From positions 26,102,001-26,166,000 of the forward strand of contig OZ260663.1 of the NCBI GenBank assembly GCA_965285935.1: 64,000 bases of DNA, read 5' to 3'. A program made the translations under genes and the position numbers. How positions within the stretch are numbered: the stretch's first letter is position 1; each line of letters starts with the position of its first letter. Positions 21,750 to 44,700 of this stretch are shown here, in pieces. The notes under the pieces were generated by a model that worked only from the letters and a program-made list of their open reading frames with translations, ran no database searches and had not been told where the DNA came from. This stretch comes from Ophelia neglecta. Its lineage: Eukaryota.

Positions 21750-24265
21750 ATTGATTTTTCTTACTGTTGCCAAAAAATATAATTTATTTATACAATTTTA
21801 AAATGATTAAATATTAACATAAGATGCCTTCCCACGGGTGAGTCGAGCCTAGCTCTGCTTCAGCATTAACAATGGGAAATGACTCAGCCCGCCTTTGAAT
21901 GCGTATGGACTATTGATCCACCGTCCGGCATAATCAGACCTCCATCCTGAATCGTTGATTAAATGTTGAGTGGTTGAAGCAGCTAATACGCTGACGAGTG
22001 TTTTTGTGTTAGTGATGCAATATTGAGAGTCATTCAGCCTTCTGGTCACATCGGTTTGTAGTAAAAGCTTCGTCAACCGTTTAGAAAGAAAGTTAGGTAT
22101 GAATCTTCTTGAAAATGTTTACTGTGTTGGAAAAACAGTGGAAAGCAGTGAAGGAAGTTTGGCCTATTTTGGGTCTTAGTAGGGAATCCCTCTATGTACC
22201 ATTGGATTATACGTGCTTGTTCATGGCCTCCCAGGGAATCCCTTATTCCAGTTTTAGTTCAAACTTCATGTATGGTACACGACATAATAAATTCAGTTTC
22301 TCGAGGATCATTCATTCTAAATTTGGCATATTCAATATATGACCAGTGTATTATGCAATCAGCGGGCCTCTTGTCGGCGTATAACCACAGTAGTGCTCCC
22401 ACTCAAATGGTCGGATAGTTATACGCTCTACAAGCCTAGAGCAATGATATTCTAGCAATCACACCTGTCTTAATGCGTTTGAACTTAATCATGAACCCAG
22501 GAAGATTCATATTCATAGGCAAAAAAATTGTTGGCGGGCAAACAGGTTTTGTGGACTGGGTGCAGTGTTCGCAACATTTAGGGCAGTCCTTCAGAGATTC
22601 AGTGTTGCCGATCAATTCAGTTTGCGCTTAATACAACGGTAGTAGTATAGGTGTCGTCTGAAAGTAGTACTTGATCCCTTTTCGATACACCGAGACAAAA
22701 CACGCATTATGTAGCGGTTCTGTCTGTGAACATAACTCACAATGGCCACCATATTGACCTGATACTTAATACCTCGAGCTGAGATCCAGACAGTTGGGAA
22801 TGTTAACGAGACGTCTTTTCCTTTTAATTCTAATAATTACGAAAGAACGTACAGCTAATAACATATATTCCTACTGAATTGTCTTTGATGATGCTTTTAG
22901 TCGTGCGGGTGTGTGTGTGGGTGTGTGGGTGAGGGTGTGTGTGTGTGTGTGTGTGGGGGGGTCTATCAATTGCTATGGATACCTTTTTTTAATTAATCAA
23001 CGCTTTTTTCATCCGGGATTAAATCCGTGGCTCAGTAATTAACATTTTCGATTTGGCGGATCAAGATTTCTTTAATCAATATTTATGGAAATACCATCTC
23101 TCTGCAAGCTCATGGTAACCATTTATTTGTCTAATTGTTTCAACGAAGATTGAGTTAAGTGTACTCGTCCGTCTCGCTACAGAGTAACTTTATCGTACAA
23201 ATAAAATGGGTGGTTCTGCAATGATTGTAGGCCTATACATGTATTATGAATTAACCATAATCAATTTAATTTTAGACTTACAGTGTTTGCCTTCACTGAA
23301 ACCGCGGCATAGCCTATATAAATGTACCAATCATATTAGCTCACCCTGCTGGCAGTCATAAAAATAATTGATTTTTATCGGTATTATGGAAAATTTACAA
23401 TGGTCTTAGCAAAATCTATTGTATGTGTTCTGTCTGTATTTATTTTATTACATTAAGAATACTATAATAACGAAGAAACTTAAATATCTTTTAAATTTAT
23501 TCACACTTAATGGATGACTACTATGATAATGGATATTTAACAGTTCACATTTCCTATCGCTTTATGCTCGCTTGGGGTCCATCGTTTACGTGTAAAGTAT
23601 GTTATAATGTATTGAATGCAGTTTATATATATGTTTACTACCCGTTTGGATCAGAAGGTTCGTTGCTCGACCCTCACATTTGAATTAAGGTGTTCTTGGC
23701 GTGGGTTTCCAAGTGTTCATTACCTAGTTTCAAGCATTGTACATTGTACAATACACATATCAGGTATTGGCAACGTTCAGCTAATGGACAGCCAAATTCC
23801 GTGTAGTACAGGACAGCTCACGAATAGATAAATGATTCATATTATTCTGTCCAAACAACAGGCTGATGTCACTAGTGGACTTTGTATGGTAGATAAAGAA
23901 CGAGGTGGAGATGACTCTTGATAATAATACCATCGAGAGTGCTGCTCGAGGGTCGTCCATATCGAGTGCACTATCACACTTAATATATCTGTAGGTTGAC
24001 TTATGTTTTTGGATAACCTGGTAATCTAGCAGGCAATCTCTGGTAAACTCTCAGGCAGTGCCCTGTACAATTGAACAATAAAGGGCTGGTCATTGGCCTG
24101 AAAAGTGCAGAACATCGTTGACCCATAATATGTTGACCATACACATAATTAGGCGATTAAAACAAGGACTTCGCTTATTAAGCCCTGCATGGCTAAGGAT
24201 TTTAAATCCTAATTTTTATTCATTGTATACGACACAGTCAGTCTGGCTGTTTATACTCTGTACAA
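21750..24265 (+). repeat. Block Y, three copies (about 21750-24265, 26180-28590, partial 37330-39330), including the promoter/5'-exon module and a (GT)n tract
   Basis: Shared GTGTTAGTGATGCAATATTGAGAGTCATTCAGCC and GGGATTAAATCCGTGGCTCAGT; (GT)n at about 22909-22955 and 39003-39031. Confidence 0.88.
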
Positions 24266-27200
24266 ATGATAATCATCAACTGTTCCAAAACAATTTCACT
24301 CCCCGTAATCTTTGCTCTGTGTATTGTTTCCTCTTGTTTGAGAACCCTTTCAATGGAAATTTACGTTGCGACAGCTTTTAATTATACTAAAGTAAAATCG
24401 GAATTAATGTCTAAATCCCAAAAGAAAAGTCACGACAATAGAAACATTGTATTTATTGATCTTTTTACAGAATAACAGGAAATATATAATGCTTTACTTG
24501 ATTGTAATCATATGTTTAACAATCAAGTTATAAGTAGTCGATAAGTTGCTCTTATTCATTAAATTCATTGTGGATAGTAACCTGTTGGTGAATCAAGATT
24601 AATGCATTTATAAAACGCCATATCTGCTATTATTATTCTCTATCTTAAAAGAATTTCATAGACAGGTATCGTAAACACTAAAATGAAAACTAACTTCCTT
24701 GTTGTTCCCATCAGATTTTAACTTATAATACAAAGAAATATTACTGCGCAGAAGGTAATAAAGAAATCTATACCCTCTAATTGATTCAAGCAAATGGTAG
24801 TTATATTCCACTACCACGGATCAATTAAAATATTTCAGAATAGAATTACTTTAGAAAAGTGAAGTGAACGACTAATAGGACACTTCGATCTTGCCCCTCA
24901 AATTAGATTTAGACCTGATCTGGACCATATACTGTATCGTTTTCAGGTCATCTGCCACCAACACATCCACCAAAGATTCCCTATAACCTTTAAAAACCGA
25001 TTCCGTACGCTAGATCGATTTATATAACAGGGTTTGGTCATAAGCGTTCCTTCAAATCTGTTCAATCCACAGGAGAATGTTGACCATGTTAAAGACGAAC
25101 GGAGCGTCTGATCATAAATTCACAATGCTTTCTCAAAGCCATAACTGTCGGTTCGTGATATGCTAACGCATCGACAAGATAACTAACATATGGATATATG
25201 GACCAATATATAATATATAATTATGTGAACGCTGTTAAACAAGAATACCAGTGCAAAACATCGACGTCTTTTTTTCATTAAGTGCGATGTTAGGCACGGT
25301 TTTGGTCTCGCAAAAATATATTATTGCCTATTACTTTACATGACTGTAGTCATATTTGGTCGCTTAATTCAATCATTTCTGCAATATATTTGGTTTTACT
25401 TATTGGCCCATGTATGCCCCGTAGGCTTTTATGTGTATCTCACCTCCAGTATATAGTAGGCTGTATGGGTAAAAAGAGCGTCCCATGTCATTCATAGAAT
25501 TAATGCAAATATATGTGGTTTCTTATAGCAAAAAAACATTCAATGTTACATGCTTACTTGTGTTTTCCGGTCGAATGTTTCCTAATAGAGAAGTTCCTGC
25601 AAATAAATGTCCCAGGCGTGCACCTAACCCAATGTAGTGTGTTCTTCAATCTAAAAATTTAGGTGTTAACCTTTCTTTGGCATTTGACTATGTCGGCCAC
25701 ACCAACAAGATAAAGTAATTAAAAGTGGAGGTTCAACCTATTTTCAAGTCTTATCCCGTTGCATTATTCATGGTTTCATTCTACTCTACTCGAAAGATGA
25801 GCGCTATAAAACAATTCAGTAAAGAAAATAGTTCGTTTATTTTAATTCATTATTAAGTTTACTTCTGCATGGACAAAACACACACCAGTATGGAGAGAAA
25901 TATTTATATACGAGTAATATGGTTAAAATGTCCTTGCAATACTTTAGGAACAATTGCACTTAGGTACAAGGTACAAAAAAATTCCCGGTGAATGTGCACA
26001 AAACAAAATGGAGCATTATTGAAGTTAAAAGTTTAGAAAATGCGACAGTACCAAAATAGTTGAAGTACCCAACATGATCAATTGCCGATTATAAGCATGT
26101 ATAGCGGTAGTGTCGAATATGAAGAAAAATGCCGAAATACTGAATATGGAGTAAGGCCGAAAAAGGCACTTCTCGTGATTATTCTTATTGTTGCCAAAAG
26201 ATATAATTCATAAACACAATCATAAAATGATTAAATATTTACATTAGATGCCTCCCTACTGGTGGTTCACATGCTAGCGTTCAACGTTTGAACTTAATGG
26301 AAATCTCCGAGATACATATTGCACTTTATACTTAAATGTATACAATTTTGTTATAATTATATACTGAACGATCCCGCACTTGAACGCTTAAACAATATTG
26401 ATCCACCGTCAGACATAATTAAACCTCCAATCAGAAATGTTGATCAAATGTCGAGTTGTTGAAGCAGCTAATAGGCTGACGTGTGTTTTTGTGTTAGTGA
26501 TGCAATATTGAGAGTCATTCAGCCTTCTGGTCACATCGGTTTGTAGTTAAAGCTTCGTCAACCGTTCAGAAAGAAAGGTAGGTATGAATCTTCTTGAAAA
26601 TGATTACTGTGTTGGAAAAACATTGAAAAGCAGTGAAGGGTCTTAGTAGGGAATAACTCTCTTTACCATTGGCTCTAACGTGCTTATACATGGACTCCTA
26701 GGGAATCCCTCATTCCGGCTATAGTTCAAACGTCATGTATGGTACACGACATTCTAAATTCAGTATATCGAGGATCATTCATTCTAAATTTGGCATATTC
26801 AATGTATGACCAGTGTTTTATGCTATCAGCGGGCCTCTTTTCGGCGTATAACCCCCAATAGTCCTCCCGCTCGGATGGTCGGTGGTTATACGCTCTTCAA
26901 GCCCAGAGCAATGATATTCCAACAATCACACCAGTCTCAACGTGTTGAACTTTATCATAAACCTAAGTTGATTCATATTGATAGGCAAAAATTGGTTGGC
27001 GGGCAAACAGGTTTTGGTAGACTGTGTGCAGTTTTTGCAACGTTTAGGGCAATTCTTCAGAGATTCAGTGTTGTCTGTCAATTCAGTTTGCGTTCAATAC
27101 AACGGTAGGTGTCGTCTGAAAGAATTACTTGATCCCTTTTCGTTACACCGAAACAAAACACGCATTATGTAGCGGTTCTGTCTGTGAACATACACATGTA

Positions 27201-29757
27201 ACTCACAATGGCCTCCATATTAACCTGATACCGAGCTAAGAGGGGGGGGGGGCTCTTTCAGTTGCTATGGATACCCTTTTAATTAATTAATGCTTTTATC
27301 AGCCGGGATTAAATCCGTGGCTCAGTAAATAACATTATTCGATTGGACGATTCAAGATTTATTAAATCAATAATATTTGGAAATATCATCTTTAAAACAG
27401 TCACAATGATCTCTGTCAGTTAACACAATGTTCTCTGCAAGCTAATGATAACCATTTATTTTAAAAATTGTATCAACGAAGATTGAGTCAACTGTATTCT
27501 TCCGTCTCGCTGCAGAATATGGCAAAAATAAAATGGGTAGTTCTACAATGAGTGTGGTCCTATACATGTATCATGCATTAAGCATTTTTATATTTGAATT
27601 ATACAGGATATCCCGTCCAGTTTTTGCCTTCATTGAAACCGCGGCATAGCCTTTACAAATATTCCAATAATATTAGCTCACCCTGCTGGCAGTCAGATTT
27701 TTATCGGCATTATGCATAATTTTCAATGGCTATACCAAAATCTATTGTATGTGTTCTGTCTGGATTTATTTTATTGCATTAGAGATACTATAATAACGAA
27801 GAAACTTAAATATCTTTTAAATTTGTTCACACTTAATGGATGACTACTATGATAATGGATAATTGACAGTTCACATTTCATATCGCTTTATGCTCTCTTG
27901 GGGCCCATCGTTTACGTATAAAGTATGTTATGATGTATTGTAAGCAGTTTATATATATGTATATTCCAATGATCTTATAGGCTTCTCAGGTAGATCTGCT
28001 CTTGGAAGGAATAGGCTATACTACCTGACTTCTTACACCGAGTTTCCAAATGTTCATTACCTAGTTCCAAGCAATGAGCAGTGTTCAATACAAAATATCA
28101 GGTATTGGCCGGCCAATAGCAACGTTCAGCTAATGGATAGCCAAAAGGCGTGTAGTAATCGACAGTTCACGAATGAATAAATGCTTTATATTATTCTGTC
28201 CAAACAACAGGCTGATGTCACTAGTGGACTTGGTAGATAAAGAACGAGGTGGAGATTACTAATACCATATCGAGTGCAGCACGATGGTCGCCTATATCGA
28301 ATGCATTATCACACTGAATATACGTTGACAAATGTCTTTGGTAAACCTGGTAATCTACCAGACAATCGCTGGTAAACTCTTAGGCCTTGTACAATTGAAC
28401 AATGAAAGGCTGGTCATTGGCAAGAAAAGGGCAGGAGATCGCGGACCCATAGTATGTTGACTATACACATAATTAAGCGATTAAAACAAGGACTACGCTT
28501 ATTAAGGCCTGCATGGCTGAAGATGTTAATTGCTAATTTCCGATCATTGTATACGACACACTCAGTCTGGTTCTTTATACTCTGTACATGGTATAAACCT
28601 GCGGTTCCCAGTTGCAAAAACATTCTGCTATCACAAAAGAAATCTCGGATATACCTTGCTTAAATCGACATGACACTGTGACGATTTAAAAACTGATGAA
28701 ACGTATAAGCTTGATTATGTACTATTGTTTTAGAAAGGTTCAAAGTGCAAATTGCCATCAGTGCGCAATGTATCATGCTTAAGCAAAGTATGAATAATGA
28801 ACAGAATCCATACCTATAGTTGATATATACATGTATGTATACCTGATAAGACACTTTATTTTTATTTATTTTGTGAAAAGATGTGATTAGATAAGGCGTA
28901 GTAACATTGCTAGCCCTTGTTGGATGACATAAGTACACTACAACACGTATCAGCTACTTAGTCCACATGAAGTTTTTTCTTATTTACCTGCTATGTAACT
29001 GAAACCTGCCTGAGTCGCCTATTTAGTTTGCTTGAAACACAGCAGAAACATGGCAGTGCATCCATGTGCAGTAGTTTTCCCAAGTCTGAGAATCTCTCCG
29101 AAATTCGCATTGTAAATAAACTATTAGACACTGTGTTTATCTGCCAGTCTGTGATAATCTACTAGCCACTGCGATCAGACAGCCTGTCTGATATATTACC
29201 CGAATTAATCTATTGTGGCAAACATTACAAACGTATGCTCACACATGTTATTCGTAATATCTGGGGATCAGCTGATGGATAGTGCCAGTAGTGTGACAGG
29301 GCAGAAGTAACGTTAGCAGATGTGATTCTTGCTTGTCGCTCAAAAATATTTCTAAACTATTTGTCAAGGAAAAGTGTTATCACGAAATGTCAGATCTATT
29401 TAATGTGTATTTTGAAGGAATACACTTTTTCACTCAGCCTTTAACAAACCTGTAGTTTAGAATACACATGTGAGTGTAATGGATTGTAAGTTTTTTTTTA
29501 TTATTATTTGGTTGTAATTTTTATAAAGAGTCAAGGAGCTGGGGATACATTATTGTGGAGCTGCTGCTATCTTATGTGTTAGGACCAATTTAAAGGCACT
29601 TTTTGATTAACGATTTAGTTTTATCTGTGAGATATCCACTACAGTGTTTCTCACATCACTGCTAGGTTGTTGTGCCCAATATTTGAGGTGGACATTGGTC
29701 AGTGAATTCTGATTTATCATTATGCCAGGTGACATTCGAGGAGCGCCAGAAGACACA

Positions 29758-32700
29758 ATGGCAACACATTGTTTATTTTGTGACAAAAGTTTCATCGACC
29801 GAAAAAAACGCAGGAGCCACGCAAAGAAGGACCATGGCTTACCCTGTTCATTATGCAAGAAAAGAAATTGCATTGGGGACCAAGGATTGGCTGAACATAC
29901 GAGAGTCAAACATGCGGGACAACCTTTTGTCGCTCAACAAAAGGAGACTAAGTCAAAAACTAGTAACCGGTAAGGGTATCATAAATCGGTTCATTCTAGT
30001 AGCATTTATAAGGTCAGTGCCGAATGAATTTATTGCTGACTTAATAGAAAATATCTTCTTGTAAACATTCAATAAGTCCTTTATGGTACAATCATAAAAC
30101 TAATTAACAAATATGTTATCAATGTTTTAGTATTCAAATATTCCCTTTCACGACTTTTTCTCATTCACGGCTATGTTTCTAAGTGTTGTTTTAATCATTG
30201 ATTAGCAAAAAGAAGAAAGTGAGACTGCATCCTATATTTACATCCATTTATTTTAGTATACCGTGTGACCAATGTGGTCGAATACTTAAAGGAAAACATG
30301 GACTAAAGCTGCATAAAAAGATGAAGCACGGCGATTCACATTCAGGTAATCATTGTTTCATTTTTTGCGAAAAGAAGATGATATGTTAGGCGGTAGTTCC
30401 ATAATGTTAGTTTGTTCTAAATGTTATATATAAGGATTATGCCTGCCGTCACTTATATATTATGATCTTATTATGTGTCATTTCTGTGCCTGCAGCACAT
30501 TTCCCAAAAACATATATTATCATTCGAATTCAGTTGTACTTTGGGTTGTTCGTGTTCAACAGGGCAACATAGAAAGGTAGCATGCCTATGAATAAAATAG
30601 CTGAAGATGTGTTATGCAAATTACGTGTAAATAATAATCTAATACAAACTGGGAGTCAGTGGCCTACATGCAAATGTCTTAGCACATAAACAGGTAAAAG
30701 TCATAACGTATGATGTCTTCAACACATAATGGACATGTATCCATAGCCTACACCAGATTTTATTTTGGTTATGCATTGTTTCAATTCATGTCGTAACGGA
30801 AGCCTTGGTAAAATGAAATATGTTTGGCTATCGTAAGAATTTCCAATGTCCGAATTCACCGTAGCCAATTCAATCTAACCATTATATACGTTCCGCTTAT
30901 TGGGTTCAGGGATGCATTTTCATATTCCGCACAAAAGGGCGAATTTCAAGATTTCACCTTTCATTCCTTGTATTTACGCCTTTATGTTTGGTACCCCCCA
31001 CCCTTTGGGTAATTTACGCCGGCTATATTGGTGTTTGTTGCTTTGCTTAAAGTAGAAAATATGTATAGCCCTAAATGCATACTTACAAATAACTTAGCAA
31101 AGCATGTATTGTGCAGCTCTTTTCAAGCCAGGATATGATTCCTGAAATATTCACATAATGGATGCGCAGTGATTTTGCAGCAAAGAAACGGGGATTGTTG
31201 AAAGATAGTTATCTGAACAAAATAAAATATTCATATTCGGAAATTACTCTCTGCTAGGTGATACCCTGAAATATCGAAGGAGTCGGGAATGATGAACTGT
31301 TGAAAAGAACACACATGTAAAATTAATATAGCCGCTCAGATATCGGTCCTTCGGTGTTTTTACAATTGTAAAAAACCCTCTCCTTGGTGGAGGTGTGAAT
31401 GCTAGTTGACAAAAAAACTAGTGTTTAATTACATGTAAAAGCGCCTGCTCAAAACTATAGATTTATTCAGGGGTATAGGGCGTTTGAATATTGTTTTCAA
31501 CAAGTGATTCAGTTATTTTATTTCGCATCGACATCTCCATGTTTCGACATACACTGCTCTATTTTCTCCAACCATGGGAGCTACACCGTATTTTGGTGCC
31601 CACAATGTTGACCTCCAAAATGAATTAAGTTTGTTTTTCTTCGTATTATTATTAGTATCTTGATTTAAAAGAATATTTAGTAAAGCTTGGTTTCCAGGTA
31701 TGTTTTCTCACTATCGTACATGCCATGGTGGCATGCCATTTTTTTATTTTTACAATTGTGATGACAAATAAACACCATTGGCTCATTATGATTTATTTAT
31801 CAGGGTAATTCTTTCGCCGGCAGTCATTATATAAGTGTGTATTTGTTTGTACATCGTATTACGGCGTTTGTGTTTAAGAAAACAATCATTCGTGTTTAAA
31901 TTATTACGTACATGTGGTAACTATTGTGGTCACTCCACAAAACATTTAAAGCAGGCGGGTGATTTTATAAACGCCATGTACACATTTTTTTATTTACGCT
32001 GTGCCCCGATTTCAATGTCTCCTGTGTGCAAATTACTATCCAAGTGTTATGAACTATGCTGGTTAAAAGGAACACTTTCACCAAACTAAGAATGAACCCT
32101 AACGTAATGACTTGTTTCTAGTTTTCAGTATTTTAACATCTAGACAAGTATTTTTTATTTTTTTTTGGTAGAGCAGGGAAGCAATACACAATGACTTCTG
32201 TAATGCTCCTCAACCAAAAACCTTTCATACTGTCACTCTTAAGTCTACCTTTTTCAGTTCACCCAATATTAATCACCCAATTACAACTCAATTGAATTAT
32301 CCCAAACAATAAACAAGGGGGAAATATAATATTAACTAGTATGATTCATTACAGTTGCATTGCCTAATGATTCCTTCCTGGCGATTTCAAGCACCAACCT
32401 GAATACTTATATTGGTGACAACTTACAGCCAGTCGAACCATTTAATATTAGAATGAAGGAGGCCGTTGACCAACTGACATCGTTTCTCAGGGAGCATCCA
32501 CAGCTTAACGTTAGTAAGGTGGTTAAAGTAAGTTAAGAAATATTTATGTTATATTTAGTTCTAGATATGTGAAATCGCTGACCCTTCCCTGATATCCTAC
32601 ACATAAGCAATTTCTAGCTATGTGTTTAACCGACGGAAATAAAGTTACCGACACAATATGATATATTATTTCTGAAAAAAAAATACATGAAAAAATTAAA

Positions 32701-34267
32701 TGTATAGTTGGTAGTAGGTGTTGATTAGGGGGTAGGGAAGAAAGTATTTGGGAATTTGGAGAGGATTTCTGGGAGGATGTTATTAGGGTTGCGACGGGTC
32801 GGTTGGTAGGTCATGTAGGTTGTTATTTTATTTGCCTACTAGTTAGCTACTTCAAGGTATATATAGCAGTATCAATTAGTTGCAGTCAAATATTTCAGAA
32901 TTCATGTAGATTATTGAGGCCTTCAGACATTGACGCCAATTGTTTTGATAAATGCGCATTATGTTTTATGGTCATTCATTGTCTCGCACTATTTGGTTAA
33001 TATTATATTTTCATCTAGAGTGGATCCATGGGAAAGGGAACTGCCATAAAAGACGATGCAGACATTGATTTAGTCGTGTTCCTGAATGGTTACAGCTCCA
33101 TGGCAGAGCTTGTCAGGGACCGAAGAGCAATGCTACAGAGGATAGAAGGTTACATCAGAGAAAGGAGAAGTAACGAAATGGATATTGTGGTAAACAACAC
33201 GTCTGAGTACGTTCTGGGCCTGACGGTGAAATTACGATTACATTCAGAAAAAATACCAGTAGACCTATTGATAGCCAGAGACTATAGTAGCTGTCAGGTA
33301 TGTCATCCACCCATTGACTTAATAACTGTCAGTTTTTGCAAGTAGTATCAACAGCCGATATACTATTTTATTAACCTTGATTTAAGTTATTATCGAACAT
33401 GTACAATCTAAATTGCGCAATTGGTTGATCGCAATATTTTGACCTTAGGACATATACAGGGAGATGACATCTAGTAACTATGGTGACTATTCTACTTCAC
33501 TGGCTCCACAGAAGCTGGACTTCGTCAAAGCAATGCCTCCAAATATCAAAGACTTGATACGACTCGTAAAATACTGGAAGAATACACATCTAACGGTACG
33601 CCAAATAAAAATGTCAAACAATACAAAATATAATCCTTAATATATTTACGGTGAGCAATGTTCACTGCTTATTTCAAATTCTATGGATTTCATTTCAAAA
33701 TATTTCATTATTTATTGAAAAGGGCCGTACTGCCCCAAATTCATATGCCATGGAGCTCTTGGTTATACATGAGTGGGAGAAAGCAGGGAGACCCCAGCGA
33801 TTTAACACAGACGGGGCATTCAAGCAGATCATGACAAGTCTGACATCCGGACATACTATCAAGGCTTATTGGGAAGAGAACTATCGATATGCTGACTTTA
33901 AGGGACGGGCAGAGGCTACTACGTAATACTAAAACATTTTTATAATATCCTCAATAACAACTGAGATGCAACTTGCTGTTTTAGTTATTTATCGGCAGGA
34001 AAGTCAATACTTTATATATTTTTGTATTAATCACCACTTGTCAAAGAAGTATATATTTTTAATAGAAGATGGTGCTCAAACGACGCCTAAAGATAGACGA
34101 TTAAAAAATATGAATCGTTCGGTTTCAGAAATGGTCCATTTTTGTTGGATCCTGCTAATCCATTTCAAAATGTTGCTGCTGGCTTCAACTGGCAAGATGT
34201 CTCGAAAATGGCCGGAGCAAGTTTGGAAAGTCCAAAGCTTCGGTGTGTGCAAGCTGGATGGAACTGA
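29758..34267 (+). CDS. OAS: OAS copy 3: 3x C2H2 zinc finger + OAS, about 412 aa, apparently chimeric
   Basis: Exons 29758-29969, 30257-30345, 32355-32527, 33019-33297, 33449-33595, 33723-33922, 34129-34267; phases 2,1,0,0,0,2 compatible (1239 nt, open). Motifs SGSMGKGT, ADIDLV, PVDLL, LIRLVKYW, PNSYAMELLVIHEWE, LLDPANP. Confidence 0.85.
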
Positions 34268-37200
34268 GATGTTGATTGTAAAATGTGTGTGCCACATGTC
34301 AGGCGGTAAAAAGAAACAAGCAAAGTGTATGTATAAGCAACATGTACACCTACACTATAGGGGATAGTGGATTTATATTTTCAAATGAGATAGAAAGAGA
34401 AGAGTGCTCATTTAAATTTTGTCTTTTGTCTTTTTTGTTTAATTTAGTTCTAGCACAATAACATAATATTTGGCTAAAGGTTCTCAATTATTATTAGCTG
34501 ATTTTAAAGAAATTGTCCTGCTGGGGGGGGGGGGCGGGTAATTTTCATGTAGACCACGTCACTCCCTCGGACACAACTTCTTGTGAAAACCCCAACACCA
34601 TTATGTGCCAATCTTAATTCTACCGTAGTTGAGTGAACGTAATAAAAAAGTGTTGGGTGATTTTCAGTCAATGGATTCTTGATGCTCGTTTTGGAATATG
34701 TGTCCGAGCAGCCGGCCTACATTTAATGTTTGTACATTATTGATTTCCGGTTAAAGTTAAAACACAAAATGTTCTCCCCGTATTTAGTGGGTATCCTTTT
34801 GGTTTAACTTGTTAAAATTGTAATAGGCAAACTTTAGGGAGATAACTTCAATTAAATTTGAATATTGTCAGGCTCCCGGATCCCCCGGCAATGACTTTTG
34901 GAAATAGTCCCCTTCCCCTGCACCCAGACATATGGTTTGAAATACATCCCCATGTGCCGGATAGACAGTTCTATTTTAACCCCCCTCCTCCCATCCTGGA
35001 CAGGGATGTCTTCCACCCCCACCCCCCCGGCACCCCCCCCCCACCCCCGGACAGGAATGTTCTTCCCCCACCCCCGCCCGTGGAGGACAATTTCTGGAAG
35101 AGCCCTTAGTTTGTCTATCACCAGTAGCGTTGCATCTAGAACTCGTTGACGTATGGAGGTTTGCTGAAAGTTACTGCCTTATATTTGGTGTATATGTTAT
35201 TTTAATATTTGGTGGCCGAACTGGAGCATCCTCGTCTCTACTTTGTGTTTGCATCAATCCCAGCCTTTCACGTTCAGGTTCATTTAGTTTCTGCAGGCGA
35301 AATCTTCTGTGTCGCCTTATGTTTAACACTTTCAGTTTAGCCATGGTGACAGGGACAACTTATGCTGTATTTATGAAATGAAGTATGCAAGCCTCAGCTA
35401 TTTTGCTCTTTAGCCATATCAATAAATTACCCCTATAGCAAAATAGCTGTTTTGTTTATTAGCTGCTTACCTTTAGAAGAGTAGATTTCTGTAAGAATAA
35501 TTAATGCTCTAGGCTTACTGTTAGGATAAACTCAATACTGTTGGACAAATCAAAAATATTTACTAAGACCTTAACCACAGTAAAGAAGCGTCATATTGAT
35601 TAAATGATAATCGTCAACTGTTCCCAAACAATTTCACTCCACGTAATCTTTGCTCTGTGTATTTTCGTCTTGTTGGAGAATCTTTTCAATGGAAATTTTC
35701 GTTGCGACAGCTTTTTAATTATACTGTTCACACTTAAGTAAAATCGGAATTAATGTCTAAATCCCTAAAGGAAAGTCATGACAATAGAAACATTGTACTT
35801 ATTGATCTTTTAACAGAATCACAGGAAATAAAATGCTTTATATGATTGTTATCATACTTTTACCAATAAAGTTAAAAGTAGTCGATAAGTTGCTCTTATT
35901 CATTAAAATATCTATGGATAGTAACCTGTTGGTGAATCAAGATAAATGCATTTATAAAACGCCATATCTGCTATTATTATTCTCTATCATAAAAGAATTT
36001 TATAGACAGGTATCGTAAACACTAAAATAAAAACTAACTTCCCTGTTGTTCCCATCAGATTTTAACTTATAATACAAAGAAATATTACTGCACAGAAGGT
36101 AATAAAGAAATCTATACTCTCTTATTGATTCATGCAAATGGTAGTTATATTCCACTACCACGGATCAATTAAAATATTTCAGAATAGAATTACTTTAGAA
36201 AAGTAAAGTGAATGACTAATAGGACACTTCGCTCTTGTCTCTTTTATTTTGGGCACATTAGATTTAGACCTGATCTGGACCATATACTGTATCGTTTTTC
36301 AGGTCATCTGCCACCAACACCTCCACCAAAAATTCCATATAACCTTTAAAAACCGATTCCGTACGCTAGATCGATTTATATAACAGGGTTTGGTCATAAA
36401 CGTTCCTTCAAATCTGTTCAATCCACAGGAGAATTTTGACCAAGTTAAAGACCAACGGAGTGTCTGATCATAGTGCTTTCTCCAAGCCATAACTGTCGGT
36501 TCGTGATATGCTAACGCATCGACAAAATAACTAACATATGGATATATGGATCAACATATAATATATAATTATGTGAACGCTAAGTGTTAAACAAGAATAC
36601 CAGCGCAAAACATCGACGTCTTTTCTTCTTTGAGTGCGATGCTGGGCACGGTTTATGTCAAGCATAAACATATTATGTGGTTTCTTATAGCAAAAAAAAC
36701 ATTCAATGTTACATGCTTACTTGTGATTTTCCGGTCGAGGCCTTCCTTATAGAAAAGTACCTGCAAATAAATGTCCCAGGCGTGCACCTAACCCAATGTA
36801 GTGTGTTCTTCAATCACAAAATTTAGGTGTTAACCTTTCTTTGGCATTTGACTATGTCGGCCACACCAACAAGATAAAGCAATAAAAAGTGAAGGTTCAA
36901 CCTATTTTCAAGTCTTATCCCGTGGCACTGTTCATGGTTTCATTCTACTCTACTCGAGAGAAAAGCGCTATAAAACAATTCAGTAAAGAAAATAGTTCCT
37001 TTATTTTAATTCATTATTACGTGTATGGACAAAACACACACCAGTATGGAGAGAAACATTTATATATGAGTAATATGGTTGAAATGTCCTTGCAATACTT
37101 AGGACAAATTGCACTTCAAGGTACAAAAAAATTCCCTGTATATGAACACAAAACAAAATGGAGCAATATTGAAGTTAAAAGTTTAGAATATGCGACAGTG

Positions 37201-38998
37201 CCAAAATAGTTGAAGTCACCAACATGACCAATTGCCGATTATAAGCATGTATGACGGTAGTGTCGAATATGTAGAAATGCCGAAACACTGAATGTGGAGT
37301 AAGACCGAAAGAGGCACCTCTATTGATTATTCTTATTGTTGCCAAAAGATATAATTAATATATACAATCATTAAAATGATTAAATATTTACATTAGATGC
37401 CTTCCTCCTGGTGGTTCACATGCTAGCGTTTAACGTTTGAACTTAATGGAAATCTCCTAGATACATATTGCACTTTGCTCTTAAATGTATAAAATTTTGT
37501 TATGATTATATACTGAATGATCTATTATATTCTGCCAACCAATTCATGTATACCAGTGTGAATAAATAAAATATGTCATTGTCAATATTTCTTGAGGGAC
37601 CAATACCCATGTGGGAATATATCATAGCTAAGTACATGTACTGTGACTAGAATGACATTAGCTCTCATATTCGTACACTGACGTACTTTGAGACTTTGAT
37701 CACTGTTAATAGATTAAATAAGTGTACGGTCATCCCTTGGCGCATTTCAAATATTTAGCTTGGAAGTTTTCTCTTTACAATTGGGTTCTGAGGTAAAACA
37801 GTATAGACAAAAAGTACGACTTGGGTATAATGTAAGTTTTTTGATTTGTGATAAGGATCTGCTTCAAGTTTACATGTCGCATGATGATTATCGTCCCCAC
37901 TTATTTTGGTTCCGATTTTTCCCAAAACCGAAACTAAACTGGTACTAAGTCGAGACTCTTCATTAAAAATAGGAAATGACTCAGCACGCACTTGAACGCG
38001 TAAACAGTATTGATCCACCGTCAGACATAATTAAACCTCCAATCAGAAATGTTGATCAAATGTCGAGTGGTTGAAGCAGCTAATATGCTGACGAGTGTTT
38101 TCGTGTTAGTGATGCAATATTGAGAGTCATTCAGCCCTCTGGTCACATCGGTTTGTAGTAAAAGCTTCGTCAACCGTTCAGAAAGAAAGGTAGGTATAAA
38201 TCTTCTTGAAAATGATTAGTGTGTTGGACAAACATTGAAAAGCAGTGAAGGTAGTTTGGCCTATTTTGGGTCTTAGTAGGCTATAACTCTCTTTACCATT
38301 GGCTCATACGTGCTTGTTCATGGCCTCCCAGGGAATCCCTCATTCCGGTTTTAGTTCAAACGTCATGTATGGTACACGACATCCTAAATTCAGTATCTCG
38401 AGGATCATTCATTCTAAATTTGGCATATTCAATGTATGACCGGTGTTATCAGCGGGCCTCTTTTCGGCGTATAACCCCCAATAGTCCTCCCGCTCGGATG
38501 GTCAAGTGGTTATACGCTCTTCAAGCCTAGAGCAATGCTATTCTAGCAATCACACCAGTCTCAACGAGTTGAACTTTATCATAAACCTAGGTTGATTAAT
38601 ATTGATACGCAAAAATTGGTTGGCGGGCAAACAGGTTTTGGTAGACTGTGTGCAGTGTTCGCAACATTTAGGGCAGTCCTTCAGAGATTCAGAGTTGCAG
38701 GTCAATTCAGTTTGCGCTTAATACAACGGTAGTAGTATAGGTGTTGTCTGAAAGTAGTACTTGATCCCTTTTCGATACACCGATACAAAACACGCATTAT
38801 GTAGCGGTTCTGTCTGTGAACGCAACTCACAATGGCCTCCATATTAACCTGATACCTAATACCTCTAGCTAAGATCGAGACAGCTGGCAATGTTAACGAG
38901 ACTTCATATGTCTTTTCCTTTTAATTCTACTAATTACGAAAGAACGTACAGCCAATAAATATATTCCTACTTAATTGTCTTTGATGCTGCTTTTAGTC

Positions 38999-39033
<35 letters not shown>

Positions 39034-41790
39034 GAGGGGGGGGGGCTCTTTCAGTTGCTATGGATACCCTTTTTAATTAATTAACGCTTTTATCAGCCGG
39101 GATTAAATCCGTGGCTCAGTTAATAACATTATTCGATTGGACGGTTCAAGATTTATTAAATCAATAATATTTGGAAATATCATCTTTAAAACAGTCACAC
39201 TGATCTCTGTCAGTTATCGCAATGTTCTCTGCAAGCTAATGATAACCATTTATTTTTAAAATTGTTTCAACGAAGATTGAGTCAACTGTATTCTTCCGTC
39301 TCGCTGCAGAGTATGGCAAAAATAAAATGGGTAATATTGCTAGCCCTTGTTTGATGTCATAAGTACACTACAACACGTATCAGCTACTTAGTCCAAATGT
39401 AGTTTTGTCTTATTTGCCTGCTATGTAACTGAAACCTGCCTGAGTCGCCTATTTAGTTTGCTTGAGCCACAGCAGAAACATGGCAGTGCATCCATGTGCA
39501 GTCGTTTTCCCAAGTCTGAGAATGTCTCCGAAATTCGCATTGTAAATAAACTATTAGACACTGTGTTTATCTGCTAGTCTGTGATAATCTACTAGACACT
39601 GCGATCAGACAGCCTGTCTGATATATTACCCGAATTAATCTATTGTGGCAAACATTACAAACGTATGCTCACACATGTTATTCGTTATATCTGGGGATCA
39701 GCTGATTGATAGTGCCAGTAGTGTGCCAGGGCAGAAGTAACGTTAGCAGATGTGATTCTTGCTTGTCGCTCAAAAATATTTCTAAACTATTTTTCAAGGA
39801 AAAGTGTTATCACCAAATGTCAGATCTATTTAATGTGTATTTTGACGGAATACACTTTTTCACTAAGCCTTTAACAAACCTGTAGTTTAGAATACACATG
39901 TGAGTGTAATGGATTGTAAGTTTTTTTTTATTATCATTTATTGTATTATGTATTAGGACCAATTTAAAGGCACTTCTTGATTAACGATTTAGTTTTCTCT
40001 GTGAGATATCCACTACAGTGTTTCTCACATCACTGCTAGGCTGTTGTGCCCAATATTTGAGGAGGACATTGGTCAGTGAATTCTTATTTATCATTATGCC
40101 AGGTGACATTCGAGGAGCGCCAGAAGACACAATGGCATCACATTGTTTATTTTGTGACAAAAGTTTCATCGACCGACAAAAACGCAGGAGCCACGCAAAG
40201 AAGGAACATGGCTTACCCTGTTCATTATGCAAGAAAAGAAATTGCATTGGGGACCAAGGATTGGCTGATCATACGAGAGTCAAACATGCGGGACAACCTT
40301 TTGTCGCTCAACAAAAGGAGACTAAGTCAAAAACTAGTAACGGGTAAGGGTATCATAAATCGGTTTATCGCATTGGATGGAACTATATCTTAAATGCTGT
40401 ATTAACCAGAAGAATGAAAATGTTTAATTCCGATTCGCTTTATAATGGTTTATAATTGTTGCAGCTCGAGGGAAGATTATGTCAATTTGAAATCGGGGAG
40501 GCTCGATAGTAAATTCTCAATTGGGTAATGCCCATATCAATATTGACAAGGTCAACTCAAATTTCAATCATTCTGTATCCCCGAACTTTTGTAATTAGAC
40601 GGCAATTTTTTTCTAGAAACCACTTTTCATAAAATAACGTTTAAAGTGTCATTAAATTGTAAATAGTCAAACTATAAATCATCAATGTCCAGCACACGGA
40701 TTCATTCTAGTAGCATTTATAAGGTCAGTGCCGAATGAATTTATTGCAGACTTAATAGAAAATATCTTCTTGTAAACATTCAATAAGTCCTTTATGGTAC
40801 AATCATAAAACTAATTAACAAATATGTTATCAATATTTTAGTATTCAAATATTCCCTTTCACGACTTTTCCTCATTCACGGCTATGTTTCTAAGTGGTGT
40901 TTTAATCATTGATTAGCAAAAAGAAGAAAGTAAGACTGCATCCTATATTTACATCCAATTATTTTAGTATACCGTGTGACCAATGTGGTCGAATACTTAA
41001 AGGAAAACATGGACTAAAGCAGCATAAAGAGATGAAGCACGGCGATTCACATTCAGGTAATAATTGTTTCATTTTTTGCGAAAAGAAGATGATATGTAAG
41101 GCGGTAGTTTCATATTGTTAGTTTGTTCTATATGTTATATATAAGGATTATGCCTGCCGTCACTTATATATTATAATCTTATTATGAGTCATTTCTGAGC
41201 CTACAGCACATTTCCCCATAACATATATTATCATTCAAATTCAATTGTACTTTTGGATGTACGTGTTCAACAGGGCAACATAGAAAGGTAGCATGCCTAA
41301 GAATATAATAGCTGAAGATATGTACGCAAATTACGTGTAAATAATAATCAAATACAAACTGGGAGTCAGTTAACACATAAACAGGTAAAAGTCATAACGT
41401 ATGATGTCTTCGACACATAATGGACATGTATACATAGCCTACAGGAGTTGTTATTTTGGTTATGCATTGTTTCAATTCATGTCTTAACGGAAGCCTTGGT
41501 AAACTGAAATATGTTTGACTATCATAACAATTTCCAATTTTCGAATTCACCGTAGCCAATTCAATCTCACCGTTATATACGTTCCGCTTATTGGGTTCAG
41601 AGATGCATTTTCATATTCTGGGCAAAAGGGCGAATTTCAAGATTTCACCTTTCATTCCTTGTATTTACGCCTTTATGTTTGGTACCCCCACTCCCACCCA
41701 CTGGCTAATTTACCCCGACCATATTGGTGTTTGTTGCTTAAAGTAGAAAATATGTATAGCCCTAAATGCATACTTACAAATAACTTCAGG
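32020..41790 (+). repeat. Segmental duplication unit B, paralogous to about 14450-31100
   Basis: Same order as unit A: OAS core, block X, block Y, zinc-finger exons. Roughly 90-96% identity by eye. Confidence 0.9.
37906..37983 (+). promoter_or_regulatory. kB-like/ISRE-like motif plus AP-1 consensus upstream of OAS copy 4
   Basis: TTGGTTCCGATTTTTCCCAAAACCGAAACTA at 37906-37936, TGACTCA at 37977-37983, candidate donor aag|gtaggt near 38190. Confidence 0.5.
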
Positions 41791-44700
41791 AAGTCAGGAA
41801 GTCAGGAATAATGAACTGTTGAAGAATACGCACATGTTAATTTAATATTCCCCTTAGAAATCGGTCCCGCACTTCGGTGTATCTATCTGCTTGACAATTG
41901 ACTGCTTTAACAATCTATACCAGCTTGCCTCCATGGGTAAACTATGTTCAATATAATAAACATACTCTAAAATTAATAATGCCTTGCAGGCAGCCTGGGT
42001 GGTGCGGCATGGATGGGTGTTCTAGGTCTACAGAACAATATCCGCCAAAGCCTGAAGGCGGCTGCTGCTCCGCAAGTGTACAATAGCATGAATGTTATTG
42101 GTAACAGCGGTAGTGGCGTGCGACAATATGCGACTCTACCTGGTTTTCACGGTCAAAGTAAGCACAACTTTAACTTTTCAAACTTGACAAAATCTCTCAA
42201 GCGTGATCTGACCTTGACCTTTAAGGGTGAGAGCTGATTCGCTCAGTGTAAAGCCATAGAGATTAATATTCAAATTATTGTATAACCTGATGGAAGCAAC
42301 AGGACGTTAGTTGAGCACGGTGACGACAGTGTATATATAGCTAGCGGCTATGAGTTTCCTTCTCCTTCTCTGCCCAAAGGGACTCTATGCCGCCACTTGT
42401 ATGCAAAATTTAAATTCCATTAGTTGCATGATAATCTGATAATTCGCTACATGTATGCATTAAAAAATGCCTTGTTAACATGTCTTAAGGACACAATGCT
42501 TTCAAATATTGTATTTAGTATTCTGTCGCTGTATGGTTGAAAACTAAAGATGAACCTACACGCTATCCGTACGCATCTCTTCAGAAATTTGATTGAACAG
42601 GATTTACATGTTTTTTTACACAATTTCTGATAGTTGTTTTGTGTGAGTACATTATTAAGCAAATTTCTAATCCCAGTTTGTTCCTTTTAATATTATAGCC
42701 TATTACTTGATGCCCGCCGCTATTTCTTAAGGCTTATAACAAGCCTGACAGTTACATAAATTAATTAATGAATTAAAAATGGTTAAGCTACTCCAATGCA
42801 GCTATGCATGGTTTGTCTCATGCACAGATTTGAATAAGTTGGAAAACATGACTTGCTTTCATATGCCCTGCTTGGTCAGTATGTCAAATATAATAGATGT
42901 ATGATATATATCCAATATTGGGTAGCGCATGTATAGACTATTTTCTTGGCTGTTTTTGCATATAAGTGGGCAAAATCATTCTGTTTTTGCCCCATTTGCT
43001 CCGCGCTTAATATACAGTAAATATACTTTTTCATGGTGAGCGCCGATAATAAGTTTATATGTTCCACAGATGTATAATGTAAAGCTTAAAATATATCATA
43101 ACAATAATACTTAGGTACACATTAATCAAAGTATTTTATGTTATAGTAATTGCTCAGCGGACGAAAATGCACTAATAATATCGAACAATATACTAATTCT
43201 TAAAAACTGTCTATTATTCAAGTAGTTTGTAACTGTCAAAGCCAAGAGCAAAATATATACAACTGTAATGACACAGAGAGAAAGTATTAGTGATTCCTCT
43301 AGTGATTTGGTGATGAAAAGGGAGCATTATTGATGACTATGCGTTTTACAGGCACACATCCTTATAAGTTCCCCGGACAATCATCGGTCAAGCTTCCCCC
43401 AGCTACTCCTGTCTCCCCAACCGGAAAGCAGTCAAAGGGTAAACACACTTAATATGTTTTGGCGAGGCGGTGAAAATATATTGCCCAGACATTATAAAAA
43501 TTATTACATTGTTGTCATCTAGTTATATCCTGTTTCCTTATTCGACATTGCTTATTGATTGAACTAGTCTATGATTCGATACACGACCTTGCTTTCTTCA
43601 AGTTCCGGTGTCCATATTTTTTAAATGTCTTACTTAATTTAAGTAATCGAGTATATTTCTGTTTCTCTATTCGACATTTCTTATTTTTTGTAATGAAGTT
43701 AGTTCCTCTATACCTATTCCAAATTCCTTACCTATTCGAGTCAAGTTGTTGCCTGTTTCCTTTTCTCGACCCTTAATTTTTGAAGCAAGCTAGTTTATTA
43801 TCCAATTGGCTTCAACAATTTACCACCCCAGCTTTATAGTCTTCAAAGAGAGACGAATTAATTATTTGGTCTAAACAAAAGGCAAAGTCATACTTCTTTT
43901 TAATACTCATCGAAAATAATATGGATTCAATGTTACCATTTTAAGTGTCAACTACCGCCAAAACTAACACTAGGCCTCAATTACTTCAGCCACTGAAAAC
44001 GCATTTTATAACGAAATATCTTAATCTTTATAACAGAATCGAATCCTGCAGAATCATTCCTGAAAAAACCTGATATTGATCTGAACACTTTCATAGTCGA
44101 TCACCTTCAGCCAACCGAAACATTCAATACAATAATGAGCGAGGTCATTAATGAACTCGCAACATTCCTCAAAGGTCAACAGGGCTTAAATATCAGTCAG
44201 ATTATTAAGGTAAACTTGTTAATTCCCACTTATATGGAAAAGAAATCAAACTTTGGTTAAACAACAAACTTCTTAATTTCTTGTTGGTCGTAATGAAATA
44301 GATTGTAGATTTTTAATGTTAATGCCTTGTCTTTATCTTGACATCCTGATTCAATAATAGCTAGATTTTTAAAGCATAGTTATTAGATCCCCTTCTCCCT
44401 AAAGCAGCGTTTTAATGATTTTAGGGTGGATCGATGGGAAAAGGCACAGCAATAAAGGAAAAGGCCGATATAGATATGGTGTTGTTTGTCAATGACTACA
44501 AAACAATGGCTGAGCTAATAAAGGGCCGTGCTGAAATGTTGGAGCGTATAGGGCGTGCTTTGGAAGGGTGGAAGATCAGCAAAGGCGAGGTAGAAATAGA
44601 CAAAGCCACCAGAACCGTTCTCAAAATTTCGGTAACAAAAGATTGTAAGGGTGAAAGAATCGTAGTACCGGTTGATGTGTTGATTGGGATGAATATTCCT

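What the first reader, a model, noticed from the sequence alone, without database searches (positions are those of the whole stretch)
29758..34267. OAS copy 3 is a sensor/catalytic chimera made by tandem duplication
Its two finger exons differ from copy 4 at only 7 of 301 nt. Its five catalytic exons and introns are about 95% identical to copy 2 and only distantly similar to copy 4. The layout coreB-spacer-ZFc-coreB'-spacer-ZFc'-coreC is what duplication of [coreB...ZFc] would give, and the shared phase-1 intron keeps the fusion in frame. Inference: module shuffling pairs a sensor with a new enzyme. Near-identity ends near 31095, but weaker similarity at 31280-31360 versus 41800-41880 hints at crossover or conversion between older homologous introns.
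Basis: partly seen in the sequence, partly recalled or inferred. Interest (0 to 1): 0.78.

Follow-up and report, generated by a model that had tools for sequence, protein, structure and literature searches.

The report
Chimeric zinc-finger OAS gene from tandem duplication
In an invertebrate's only cluster of antiviral-type OAS genes, a roughly 10-17 kb tandem duplication joined the zinc-finger exons of one gene to the enzyme exons of another; the new hybrid reads as an intact gene, and the gene that gave the enzyme half is now broken.

Summary
Copy 3 (29758-34267) is a seven-exon, 412-codon open frame with GT-AG at all six introns. Its two C2H2-finger exons differ from copy 4 at exactly 7 of 301 nt. 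Its five OAS-core exons are 96.5% identical to copy 2, and 46.5% identical in protein to copy 4.

Two collinear direct units, 14458-31357 and 32034-41880, have the layout core-spacer-ZF / core-spacer-ZF / coreC. Neutral divergence along them is roughly uniform (JC about 0.06-0.09). This fits one tandem duplication with both breakpoints in the conserved phase-1 ZF/core intron, like an anti-Lepore fusion.

- Copy 2 has no finger exons. It also carries a 1-nt deletion, seen in short-read contigs too, that gives a premature stop at 15903. The "B" core therefore survives intact only in the chimera.
- The weak 31281-31357 match is the tail of the same duplicated segment, displaced by a 185-nt repeat insertion.
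- 676 nt at the junction match nothing else in the genome.
- Gene interiors are significantly less diverged than unit edges, which suggests later gene conversion.
- ZF-OAS proteins are already annotated in gastropods and an annelid.

A tandem-haplotype artefact is unlikely. Expression is untested because no RNA runs were found. The "sensor" label and which copy is the derived one remain inferences.

The parts
29758..29969 (+). Copy 3 ZF exon 1 (two C2H2 fingers). Donor GT at 29970, ends in phase 2. An in-frame ATG 36 nt upstream (29722) is also conserved in copy 4.
30257..30345 (+). Copy 3 ZF exon 2 (third C2H2 finger). AG/GT splice sites, ends in phase 1.
30346..31095 (+). First part of the chimeric intron, homologous to the copy-4 intron 41057-41786 (JC 0.068).
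31096..31280 (+). 185-nt insertion specific to copy 3. Its core (31166-31252) is a short interspersed repeat with at least 9 other genomic copies at 75-81% identity.
31281..31357 (+). Tail of the ZF-side duplicated segment (78% identity to 41800-41880). Homology with copy 4 ends here.
31358..32033 (+). 676-nt junction stretch with no match elsewhere in the window or the genome. It is tiled without mismatch by short-read contigs.
32034..32354 (+). Last part of the chimeric intron, homologous to 14458-15065 upstream of the copy-2 core. Homology starts abruptly, and copy 2 has an extra 259 nt at 14700-14958.
32355..32527 (+). Copy 3 core exon C1 (173 nt, enters in phase 1).
33019..33297 (+). Copy 3 core exon C2. 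Nucleotidyltransferase active site: GS...KGT, D-I-D and the third Asp in VDLL.
33449..33595 (+). Copy 3 core exon C3 (OAS1_C).
33723..33922 (+). Copy 3 core exon C4 (OAS1_C).
34129..34267 (+). Copy 3 core exon C5 with the stop codon at 34265-34267.
14458..31357 (+). Duplication unit 1: copy-2 core, an 11.6-kb spacer carrying an older internal duplication, then the ZF module now used by copy 3.
32034..41880 (+). Duplication unit 2: copy-3 core, a 4.7-kb spacer, then the ZF module of copy 4.
15066..16980 (+). Copy 2: five core exons only. A 1-nt deletion near 15877 in exon C2 gives a premature stop at 15903. No C2H2 exon lies in the 7.8 kb upstream. Read as a pseudogene.
40132..46262 (+). Copy 4: apparently intact ZF-OAS gene. 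ZF exons 40132-40343 and 40968-41056; core exons 44037-44209, 44425-44715, 44955-45104, 45196-45401 and 46118-46262. Some boundaries are modelled only.
4090..7254 (+). Copy 1: divergent ZF-OAS gene with three ZF exons. The last ZF exon also ends in phase 1. Used as the outgroup.

Best explanation
Copy 3 is a chimeric ZF-OAS gene formed at the junction of one tandem segmental duplication. This is the anti-Lepore type of arrangement, in which the fusion gene lies between its two parents.

Proposed history:
1. The ancestral arrangement was geneB core, spacer, then geneC (ZFc plus coreC).
2. A segment running from the ZF/core intron of gene B to the ZF/core intron of gene C was duplicated in tandem.
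3. The first copy of ZFc, with its 5' flank and presumably its promoter, then lay upstream of the second copy of coreB.
4. That intron is phase 1 in every family member, so ZF exon 2 (ending at 30345) can splice to C1 (starting at 32355) in frame. This gives a 412-aa protein with three C2H2 fingers and an OAS core that keeps the catalytic Asp triad.

Later events:
- Copy 2, the upstream coreB, has no 5' finger exons and acquired a frameshift with a premature stop, so it is a pseudogene.
- The interiors of both halves were probably kept similar to their paralogs by gene conversion.

Shown here: the sequence relationships, the intact ORF and splice signals, the decay of copy 2, and read support for the junction. 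Inferred: a single event, which copy is derived, transcription of the fusion, and any role of the fingers in nucleic-acid recognition.
For: - Collinear direct units 14458-31357 and 32034-41880.
- Domain discordance: ZF copy 3 vs copy 4 is 93.9% aa and 7/301 nt. Core copy 3 vs copy 4 is 46.5% aa. Core copy 2 vs copy 3 is 92.3% aa.
- Neutral divergence is similar across the unit: spacer JC 0.062-0.088, core noncoding 0.065, ZF-side intron 0.068. This fits one event.
- The spacer is specific to this locus apart from a ~270-nt interspersed repeat. The collinearity is therefore not a chain of shared transposons.
- Copy 3 has a 1239-nt ORF without internal stops and GT-AG at all six introns.
- The phase-1 ZF/core intron and the 173-nt C1 exon are conserved in copies 1, 3 and 4.
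- OAS1_C hits on exons C3-C5, and the catalytic motifs align to human OAS2 and OAS1.
- The genome holds only these four cores and three ZF modules.
- Short-read contigs tile 31066-32507 with zero mismatches and carry copy-3-specific letters in ZF2 and C1.
- ZF-OAS single proteins are annotated in Haliotis asinina, Gigantopelta aegis and Owenia fusiformis. ZF and core therefore normally form one transcription unit.
Against: - No RNA data exist for this organism in the run index, so the fusion transcript has not been seen.
- The junction is not a clean Y|X join. 676 nt (31358-32033) match neither parent nor anything else in the genome, so at least one further event is needed, such as a deletion upstream of copy 2 or in the copy-4 intron.
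- The supposed parent, gene B, has no finger exons now, so its original 5' end is unknown.
- Which copy is derived cannot be polarised. The nearest database relatives are only about 35-50% identical.
- pN/pS between the copy 2 and copy 3 cores is 0.75, and the ZF differences are 7 nonsynonymous to 0 synonymous. Constraint on copy 3 is therefore not demonstrated.
Confidence: 0.66

Rival explanations
1. The derived copy is copy 4, not copy 3. ZFc plus coreB (copy 3) is the native pairing. A unit [ZF-coreB-spacer] was triplicated. The first unit then lost its ZF through a 5' deletion, giving copy 2. A Lepore-type deletion fused the third unit's ZF to the core of a downstream gene, giving copy 4.
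For: This would explain the 676-nt unique junction stretch as native intron sequence lost from both neighbours. It would also explain the abrupt breakpoints at 14458 and 41880. No outgroup is available to exclude it.
Against: It needs two duplications and two deletions, both ending in the same intron. The preferred model needs one duplication and one deletion. Copy 4 is an intact gene with no trace of a lost coreB-type core or an extra ZF downstream.
Confidence: 0.12
2. The chimera is real as DNA but is not a working gene. It may be untranscribed as a fusion, or a young neutral by-product that will decay as copy 2 did.
For: No transcript evidence was found. Core pN/pS is 0.75, and all 7 ZF changes are nonsynonymous, which is compatible with relaxed constraint. 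The tandem partner, copy 2, is already dead.
Against: About 1.2 kb of ORF and 12 splice signals are intact at a divergence where the flanking noncoding DNA carries many indels. It is the only intact carrier of the B-type core. It inherits the 5' flank of an apparently intact gene at about 96% identity.
Confidence: 0.12
3. There was no duplication junction. Four old ZF-OAS genes were patch-wise homogenised by gene conversion: ZF3 with ZF4, and core2 with core3.
For: Identity is heterogeneous. Gene interiors (JC 0.02-0.03) are significantly more similar than unit edges (0.07-0.12), with Fisher p = 5e-6 and 6e-4. Some conversion therefore probably occurred.
Against: The homology is continuous and collinear over about 10 kb, including the whole intergenic spacer, and is shifted by one unit. 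That is the signature of a duplication, not of short conversion tracts. Copy 2 has no ZF module at all.
Confidence: 0.05
4. Assembly artefact: two haplotypes of a single [coreB...ZFc] segment were laid end to end.
For: All read data come from one sample and are held only as short contigs. Absolute depth relative to the genome could not be calibrated.
Against: - The units differ by 6-9% plus a 7-kb spacer length difference.
- A haplotype join would put sequence resembling 41881 onward or the region before 14457 at the junction. Instead there are 676 nt of unique sequence.
- Contigs assembled independently from each run cross 31095, 31357 and 32034 with no mismatch.
- Contigs specific to copy 3 have about half the depth of contigs in which two paralogs collapsed. 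The junction is therefore as deep as each unit.
- No alternative contig for this locus exists in the assembly.
Confidence: 0.03

Closest known systems
Haemoglobin anti-Lepore type fusion genes, and chimeric genes at tandem-duplication junctions in general (my knowledge)
   Same: The fusion gene lies between its two parental paralogs within a tandem duplication. Its 5' part and promoter come from the downstream parent and its 3' part from the upstream parent. The frame is kept because the breakpoints lie in equivalent introns.
   Different: The breakpoints lie in sequence with no detectable homology, and the join contains 676 unmatched nt. Simple homologous unequal crossover is therefore not shown. 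One parent (copy 2) is now a 5'-truncated, frameshifted pseudogene.
Annotated lophotrochozoan C2H2-OAS proteins: Haliotis asinina XP_067657394.1, Gigantopelta aegis XP_041357507.1, Owenia fusiformis CAH1792685.1
   Same: N-terminal C2H2 fingers followed by NTase plus OAS1_C, in proteins of 384-440 aa. The Owenia finger shares the C-x2-C...GL..H...KH pattern.
   Different: The core exon is only about 35-40% identical. The fingers are not alignable beyond the C2H2 pattern. None is described in the papers searched.
Vertebrate OAS family (OAS1, OAS2, OAS3, OASL)
   Same: NTase core with the GS / D-x-D / D catalytic motifs plus an OAS1_C domain. From my knowledge, that family also diversified through tandem duplication and fusion of modules: OAS2 and OAS3 are repeated cores, and OASL is a core plus ubiquitin-like domains.
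   Different: The accessory module here is an N-terminal C2H2 finger array. Sequence identity is low (E = 1e-4 to 3e-3 for one exon). 2'-5' synthesis and any downstream effector are untested.

Membership tests
2'-5'-oligoadenylate synthetase (OAS) family | OAS1_C domain (PF10421) downstream of the NTase domain | tested here: met
   Exons C3, C4 and C5 hit PF10421 at E = 2.3e-7, 1.9e-11 and 3.4e-3, covering profile positions 19-172. The exons were searched one by one; the joined protein was not searched.
2'-5'-oligoadenylate synthetase (OAS) family | NTase active site: G-S motif plus three catalytic Asp (D-x-D and a third D) | tested here: met
   Exon C2 aligns to the active domain of human OAS2 (9h1z, E = 1.2e-4) and to OAS1 (1px5, 4rwn). 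GS...KGT, D-I-D and VDLL lie opposite the corresponding OAS2 residues. The PF01909 hit scores 17.7 bits, below the curated cutoff of 21.
2'-5'-oligoadenylate synthetase (OAS) family | dsRNA-activated synthesis of 2'-5'-linked oligoadenylates | not testable with these tools
   This needs a biochemical assay.
C2H2 zinc finger | C-x2-C-x12/13-H-x3-5-H spacing, repeated | tested here: met
   Three matches in copy 3 (29770-29835, 29845-29913, 30264-30329), and parallel sets in copies 1 and 4, from a regex over all six frames of the window. One further match, probably by chance, lies on the minus strand at 53488-53556, and there are none upstream of copy 2. The protein atlas places ZF exon 1 among C2H2 clusters.
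C2H2 zinc finger | Pfam zf-C2H2-type model above the gathering score | tested here: not met
   The best hits are PF12756 at 18.6 bits (cutoff 26.9), PF00096 at 15.3 bits (25.2) and zf-C2H2_jaz at 12.5 bits (22.6). The fingers are divergent, and the dsRNA-binding subclass is not established.
Chimeric gene formed at a tandem-duplication junction | Two collinear direct repeat units, with the gene spanning their junction | tested here: met
   Units 14458-31357 and 32034-41880. Copy 3 runs from 29758 to 34267, across the junction.
Chimeric gene formed at a tandem-duplication junction | The 5' and 3' parts have different closest paralogs, and both flank the chimera | tested here: met
   ZF is 93.9% aa identical to the downstream copy 4. 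The core is 92.3% aa identical to the upstream copy 2 and 46.5% to copy 4.
Chimeric gene formed at a tandem-duplication junction | Both parental genes identifiable as complete genes | tested here: not met
   Copy 4 is complete. Copy 2 lacks any finger or first exon and has a frameshift with a premature stop at 15903.
Chimeric gene formed at a tandem-duplication junction | Fusion transcript | not testable with these tools
   No RNA run is indexed for this organism. The species' proteins are absent from the protein library, where the best hit to exon C2 is at most 56% identical over part of its length.

The most novel reading that the evidence does not exclude
In this lineage the C2H2 finger array may act as an exchangeable recognition head for OAS cores. 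On this reading the single OAS cluster evolves by birth and death, module swapping at a conserved phase-1 intron, and gene conversion. The chimera has functionally replaced its core parent. Its fingers are diverging from copy 4 under positive selection: 7 nonsynonymous to 0 synonymous changes, mostly in the finger helices and three of them altering charge.
Probability: 0.15. Interest if true: 0.6.

Novelty: new member of a known kind. Interest (0 to 1): 0.4.

Why it matters
This is a clean, datable example of exon shuffling in an innate-immunity gene family outside vertebrates. The structure is resolved almost to the base.
- A conserved phase-1 intron between an accessory finger module and the OAS core lets a plain tandem duplication create a new, in-frame combination.
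- The only intact B-type core in the genome now depends on fingers and a 5' flank borrowed from a different paralog.
- C2H2-OAS fusion proteins exist across Lophotrochozoa, but no paper found here's searches describes them.

If the fusion is expressed, the locus offers a natural pair for testing what the fingers add to an OAS enzyme: the same fingers on two cores, and the same core with and without fingers.

Tried and rejected
- **Finger exons for copy 2.** A sensitive tblastn with the fingers of copies 1 and 3 (E up to 50) and a C2H2 regex in six frames found none in 7300-15065.
- **Source of the 676-nt junction stretch.** No match in the window at word size 7 or in the whole genome. A templated insertion from another locus is therefore unsupported.
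- **Transposons as the cause of the collinearity.** The spacer and the region upstream of copy 2 are specific to this locus. The exceptions are a ~270-nt repeat and a young ~985-bp terminal-inverted-repeat element at 8232-9217.
- **Alternative haplotype at 31095.** The loose end seen in all three runs is simply the copy-4 contig, an exact match at 41787-41816.
- **Non-reference letters as alleles.** 35 of 39 equal the paralog's letter. They reflect cross-laid or bubble-collapsed paralog contigs.
- **Polarising the copy 2 / copy 3 amino-acid differences** with copies 1 and 4. The result was 7 derived in copy 3, 4 derived in copy 2 and 12 ambiguous, which is uninformative.
- **Close orthologues to settle which copy is derived.** The library has nothing more than 56% identical to exon C2, and only over part of its length.
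- **Literature on ZF-OAS.** Three full-text searches and two papers gave nothing relevant.
- It was used only inside scripts: to count stops, to count codon differences and, for the copy-2 core exons, to place the premature stop. No whole-protein Pfam scan, structure prediction or length-matched homologue search was done.
Full report
**Context.** The window is G000:C5:26102001-26166000 of a 762-Mb, 223-contig assembly. It contains no N. The DNA is AT-rich (GC 0.32-0.42) and carries intron-containing genes. The nearest database relatives of its OAS exons come from gastropods (Haliotis, Gigantopelta, Patella) and the annelid Owenia, at about 35-53% identity over the matched stretches of these hits. 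The organism is therefore probably a lophotrochozoan without annotated proteins in the libraries. I did not determine the species.

**Gene content.** A translated self-search with the copy-3 exons finds four OAS-type cores and three finger modules, all on the + strand:
- Copy 1: fingers 4102-5162, core 5307-7248.
- Copy 2: core only, 15066-16980.
- Copy 3: fingers 29758-30345, core 32355-34267.
- Copy 4: fingers 40132-41056, core 44037-46262.

Whole-genome searches with exon C2 and with ZF exon 1 return only these copies. This window therefore appears to hold the organism's whole family at that sensitivity.

Pfam assigns OAS1_C to exons C3-C5 and gives a sub-threshold NTP_transf_2 hit on C2. 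Exon C2 aligns to the active domain of human OAS2 and to OAS1, with the GS, D-x-D and third-Asp positions conserved. The fingers fit C-x2-C-x12/13-H-x4-H three times in copies 3 and 4, but stay below Pfam gathering scores.

**The observation.**
- The copy-3 model has seven exons: 29758-29969, 30257-30345, 32355-32527, 33019-33297, 33449-33595, 33723-33922 and 34129-34267.
- These total 1239 nt and 412 codons, with no internal stop and GT-AG at all six introns.
- The finger exons differ from copy 4 at exactly 7 of 301 nt.
- The core exons differ from copy 2 at 33 of 937 nt plus one indel. Aligned noncoding sequence differs at 6.2%.
- Protein identity is 93.9% (ZF, copy 3 vs 4), 46.5% (core, 3 vs 4) and 92.3% (core, 2 vs 3).
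- The finger module ends in phase 1 (212 + 89 = 301 nt). C1 is 173 nt and begins in phase 1 in all copies. The third finger exon of copy 1 also ends in phase 1.

**Duplication structure.** Self-BLAST shows two collinear direct units:
- Core: 14460-17195 matches 32036-34505.
- Spacer: 17272-19316 matches 34602-36685, and 24264-27539 matches 35602-39333.
- Finger region: 28901-31095 matches 39331-41786, and 31281-31357 matches 41800-41880.

Substitution distances are similar along the unit: spacer JC 0.062-0.088, core noncoding 0.065, and the intron after ZF2 0.068. Unit 1 also carries an older internal duplication of the spacer (JC 0.10-0.12), of which unit 2 keeps only one copy. Apart from a ~270-nt interspersed repeat, the spacer occurs nowhere else in the genome. 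The collinearity is therefore a true segmental duplication.

The layout coreB-spacer-ZFc | coreB'-spacer'-ZFc' - coreC is what one tandem duplication produces when both breakpoints lie in the ZF/core intron. The gene at the unit junction is necessarily ZFc plus coreB'.

**The junction.**
- Homology with the copy-4 intron runs to 31095.
- It is then interrupted by a 185-nt insertion. The core of this insertion is a short repeat found at nine or more other loci.
- Homology resumes at 31281-31357 at 78% identity and then stops.
It is not evidence for older homologous introns.
- Homology with copy 2 begins abruptly at 32034 / 14458.
- The 676 nt in between match nothing in the window or the genome.

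A clean Y|X join is therefore not seen, and one more event is required. The most economical one is a later deletion upstream of the copy-2 core. That deletion would also explain why copy 2 has no finger exons.

**Copy 2 is dead.** No C2H2 exon lies in the 7.8 kb between copy 1 and the copy-2 core. Exon C2 of copy 2 has a 1-nt deletion relative to copy 3. This leads to a stop at 15903, before the third catalytic Asp. The same deletion appears in a short-read contig ("left out 1" at 33164, alongside copy-2 letters), so it is not an assembly slip. The B-type core therefore survives intact only in the chimera.

**Reads.**
- Only three runs were found, all from one sample and held as Logan contigs. 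They cover introns, so I take them to be DNA. None is on record as RNA.
- Contigs with zero mismatches cover 29990-30463, which holds ZF2 with the copy-3 letters.
- Further zero-mismatch contigs tile 31066-31362, 31102-31585, 31565-31905, 31883-32131 and 32116-32507. These cross 31095, 31357 and 32034 and run into C1.
- Of the 39 listed non-reference letters, 35 equal the paralogous letter of copy 4 or copy 2.
- The contigs carrying those letters have roughly twice the depth of copy-specific contigs: about 23-27 against 12-16 in X1, and 37-42 against 15-16 in X3. I read them as paralogs collapsed during contig building.
- On that reading the junction is as deep as each unit.
- Neighbouring contigs overlap by only 16-23 nt, so continuity at three points rests on the assembly. 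Absolute depth could not be calibrated.

Together with the unique junction sequence, this makes "two haplotypes laid in tandem" very unlikely. Long reads would close the matter.

**Selection and conversion.**
- All seven finger differences are nonsynonymous: T3S, K16Q, D25E, E46D, R71G, L89Q and K92E. Given 241 nonsynonymous and 59 synonymous sites, 7:0 has p of about 0.2, so it is only suggestive.
- Core pN/pS between copies 2 and 3 is 0.75. Polarisation with copies 1 and 4 is uninformative.
- Gene interiors are significantly less diverged than unit edges. The C1-C2 intron has 14/491 mismatches against 34/310 at the upstream edge (p = 5e-6). The ZF 5' flank, exons and first intron have 44/1389 against 47/725 in the next intron (p = 6e-4).
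- I take this as probable gene conversion after the duplication, so exon identity underestimates the age of the event.
- Conversion from the pseudogene copy 2 could in principle carry its frameshift into copy 3. This is an inference.

**Which copy is derived.** A tandem array can also be read as three [ZF-coreB-spacer] units with deletions at both ends. That reading makes copy 4 the chimera and the 676 nt native intron. It needs four events rather than two, with both deletions ending in the same intron. I give it about 0.12. Only an outgroup locus can settle this.

**Comparison with known systems.**
- Mechanistically this is a chimeric gene at a tandem-duplication junction, flanked by its parents as in anti-Lepore haemoglobin (my knowledge). 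Here, however, there is no detectable homology at the breakpoints and one parent is degenerate.
- The C2H2-plus-OAS architecture is not new as sequence. It is annotated in Haliotis asinina, Gigantopelta aegis and Owenia fusiformis.
- I found no paper describing it.
- Calling the fingers "the sensor" is unsupported. In characterised vertebrate OAS enzymes the core binds dsRNA (my knowledge), and the weak zf-C2H2_jaz hits (E = 0.18 here, 0.002 in Gigantopelta) are only hints.

**Limits.** The joined sequence was used only inside scripts, to count stops and codon differences and, for the copy-2 core exons, to place the premature stop. No whole-protein family scan, homologue search or fold was run. 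Expression, enzymatic activity and finger function are untested.

**Verdict.** This is a real, well-resolved structural chimera and most probably a functional gene. It is a new example of a known evolutionary mechanism in a little-studied branch of the OAS family, and of moderate interest.

Noticed in passing
window 8232-9217: A ~985-bp element with ~50-nt terminal inverted repeats. More than 40 copies elsewhere in the genome are 92-100% identical, one of them 100%. It looks like a very young, probably non-autonomous DNA transposon, and it lies between copy 1 and copy 2.
   Followed up: partly
window 18249-28588: The spacer of unit 1 carries an older internal tandem duplication: 18249-24264 versus 24264-28588, at JC about 0.10-0.12. 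Unit 2 keeps only one copy, which is closer to the second one. It also lacks the equivalent of 27540-28900.
   Followed up: partly
window 9413-14132: Another old local tandem repeat upstream of copy 2: 9413-9767 matches 12399-12748 at 78%, and 10279-10803 matches 13618-14132 at 65%. It has no coding signal and is otherwise unique in the genome.
   Followed up: partly
window 56959-58551, minus strand: Two long open exons (334 and 154 aa) match the chitin synthase N-terminal putative transporter domain (PF23000, E = 1.4e-15 and 8.6e-4). A chitin synthase gene therefore lies downstream of the OAS cluster on the opposite strand.
   Followed up: partly
window 37315-37590: A ~270-nt interspersed repeat inside spacer unit 2, with dozens of copies at 76-90% identity on several chromosomes.
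   Followed up: no
window 40344-40967: The intron between the two finger exons of copy 4 is 624 nt, against 287 nt in copy 3. The difference is a ~337-nt insertion or deletion in otherwise 98%-identical sequence.
   Followed up: no
window 4090-5166: Copy 1 has three finger exons carrying four C2H2-like fingers, against two exons and three fingers in copies 3 and 4. The exon phases are compatible with adding or dropping finger exons.
   Followed up: partly
The true N-terminus may therefore be 12 residues longer.
   Followed up: partly
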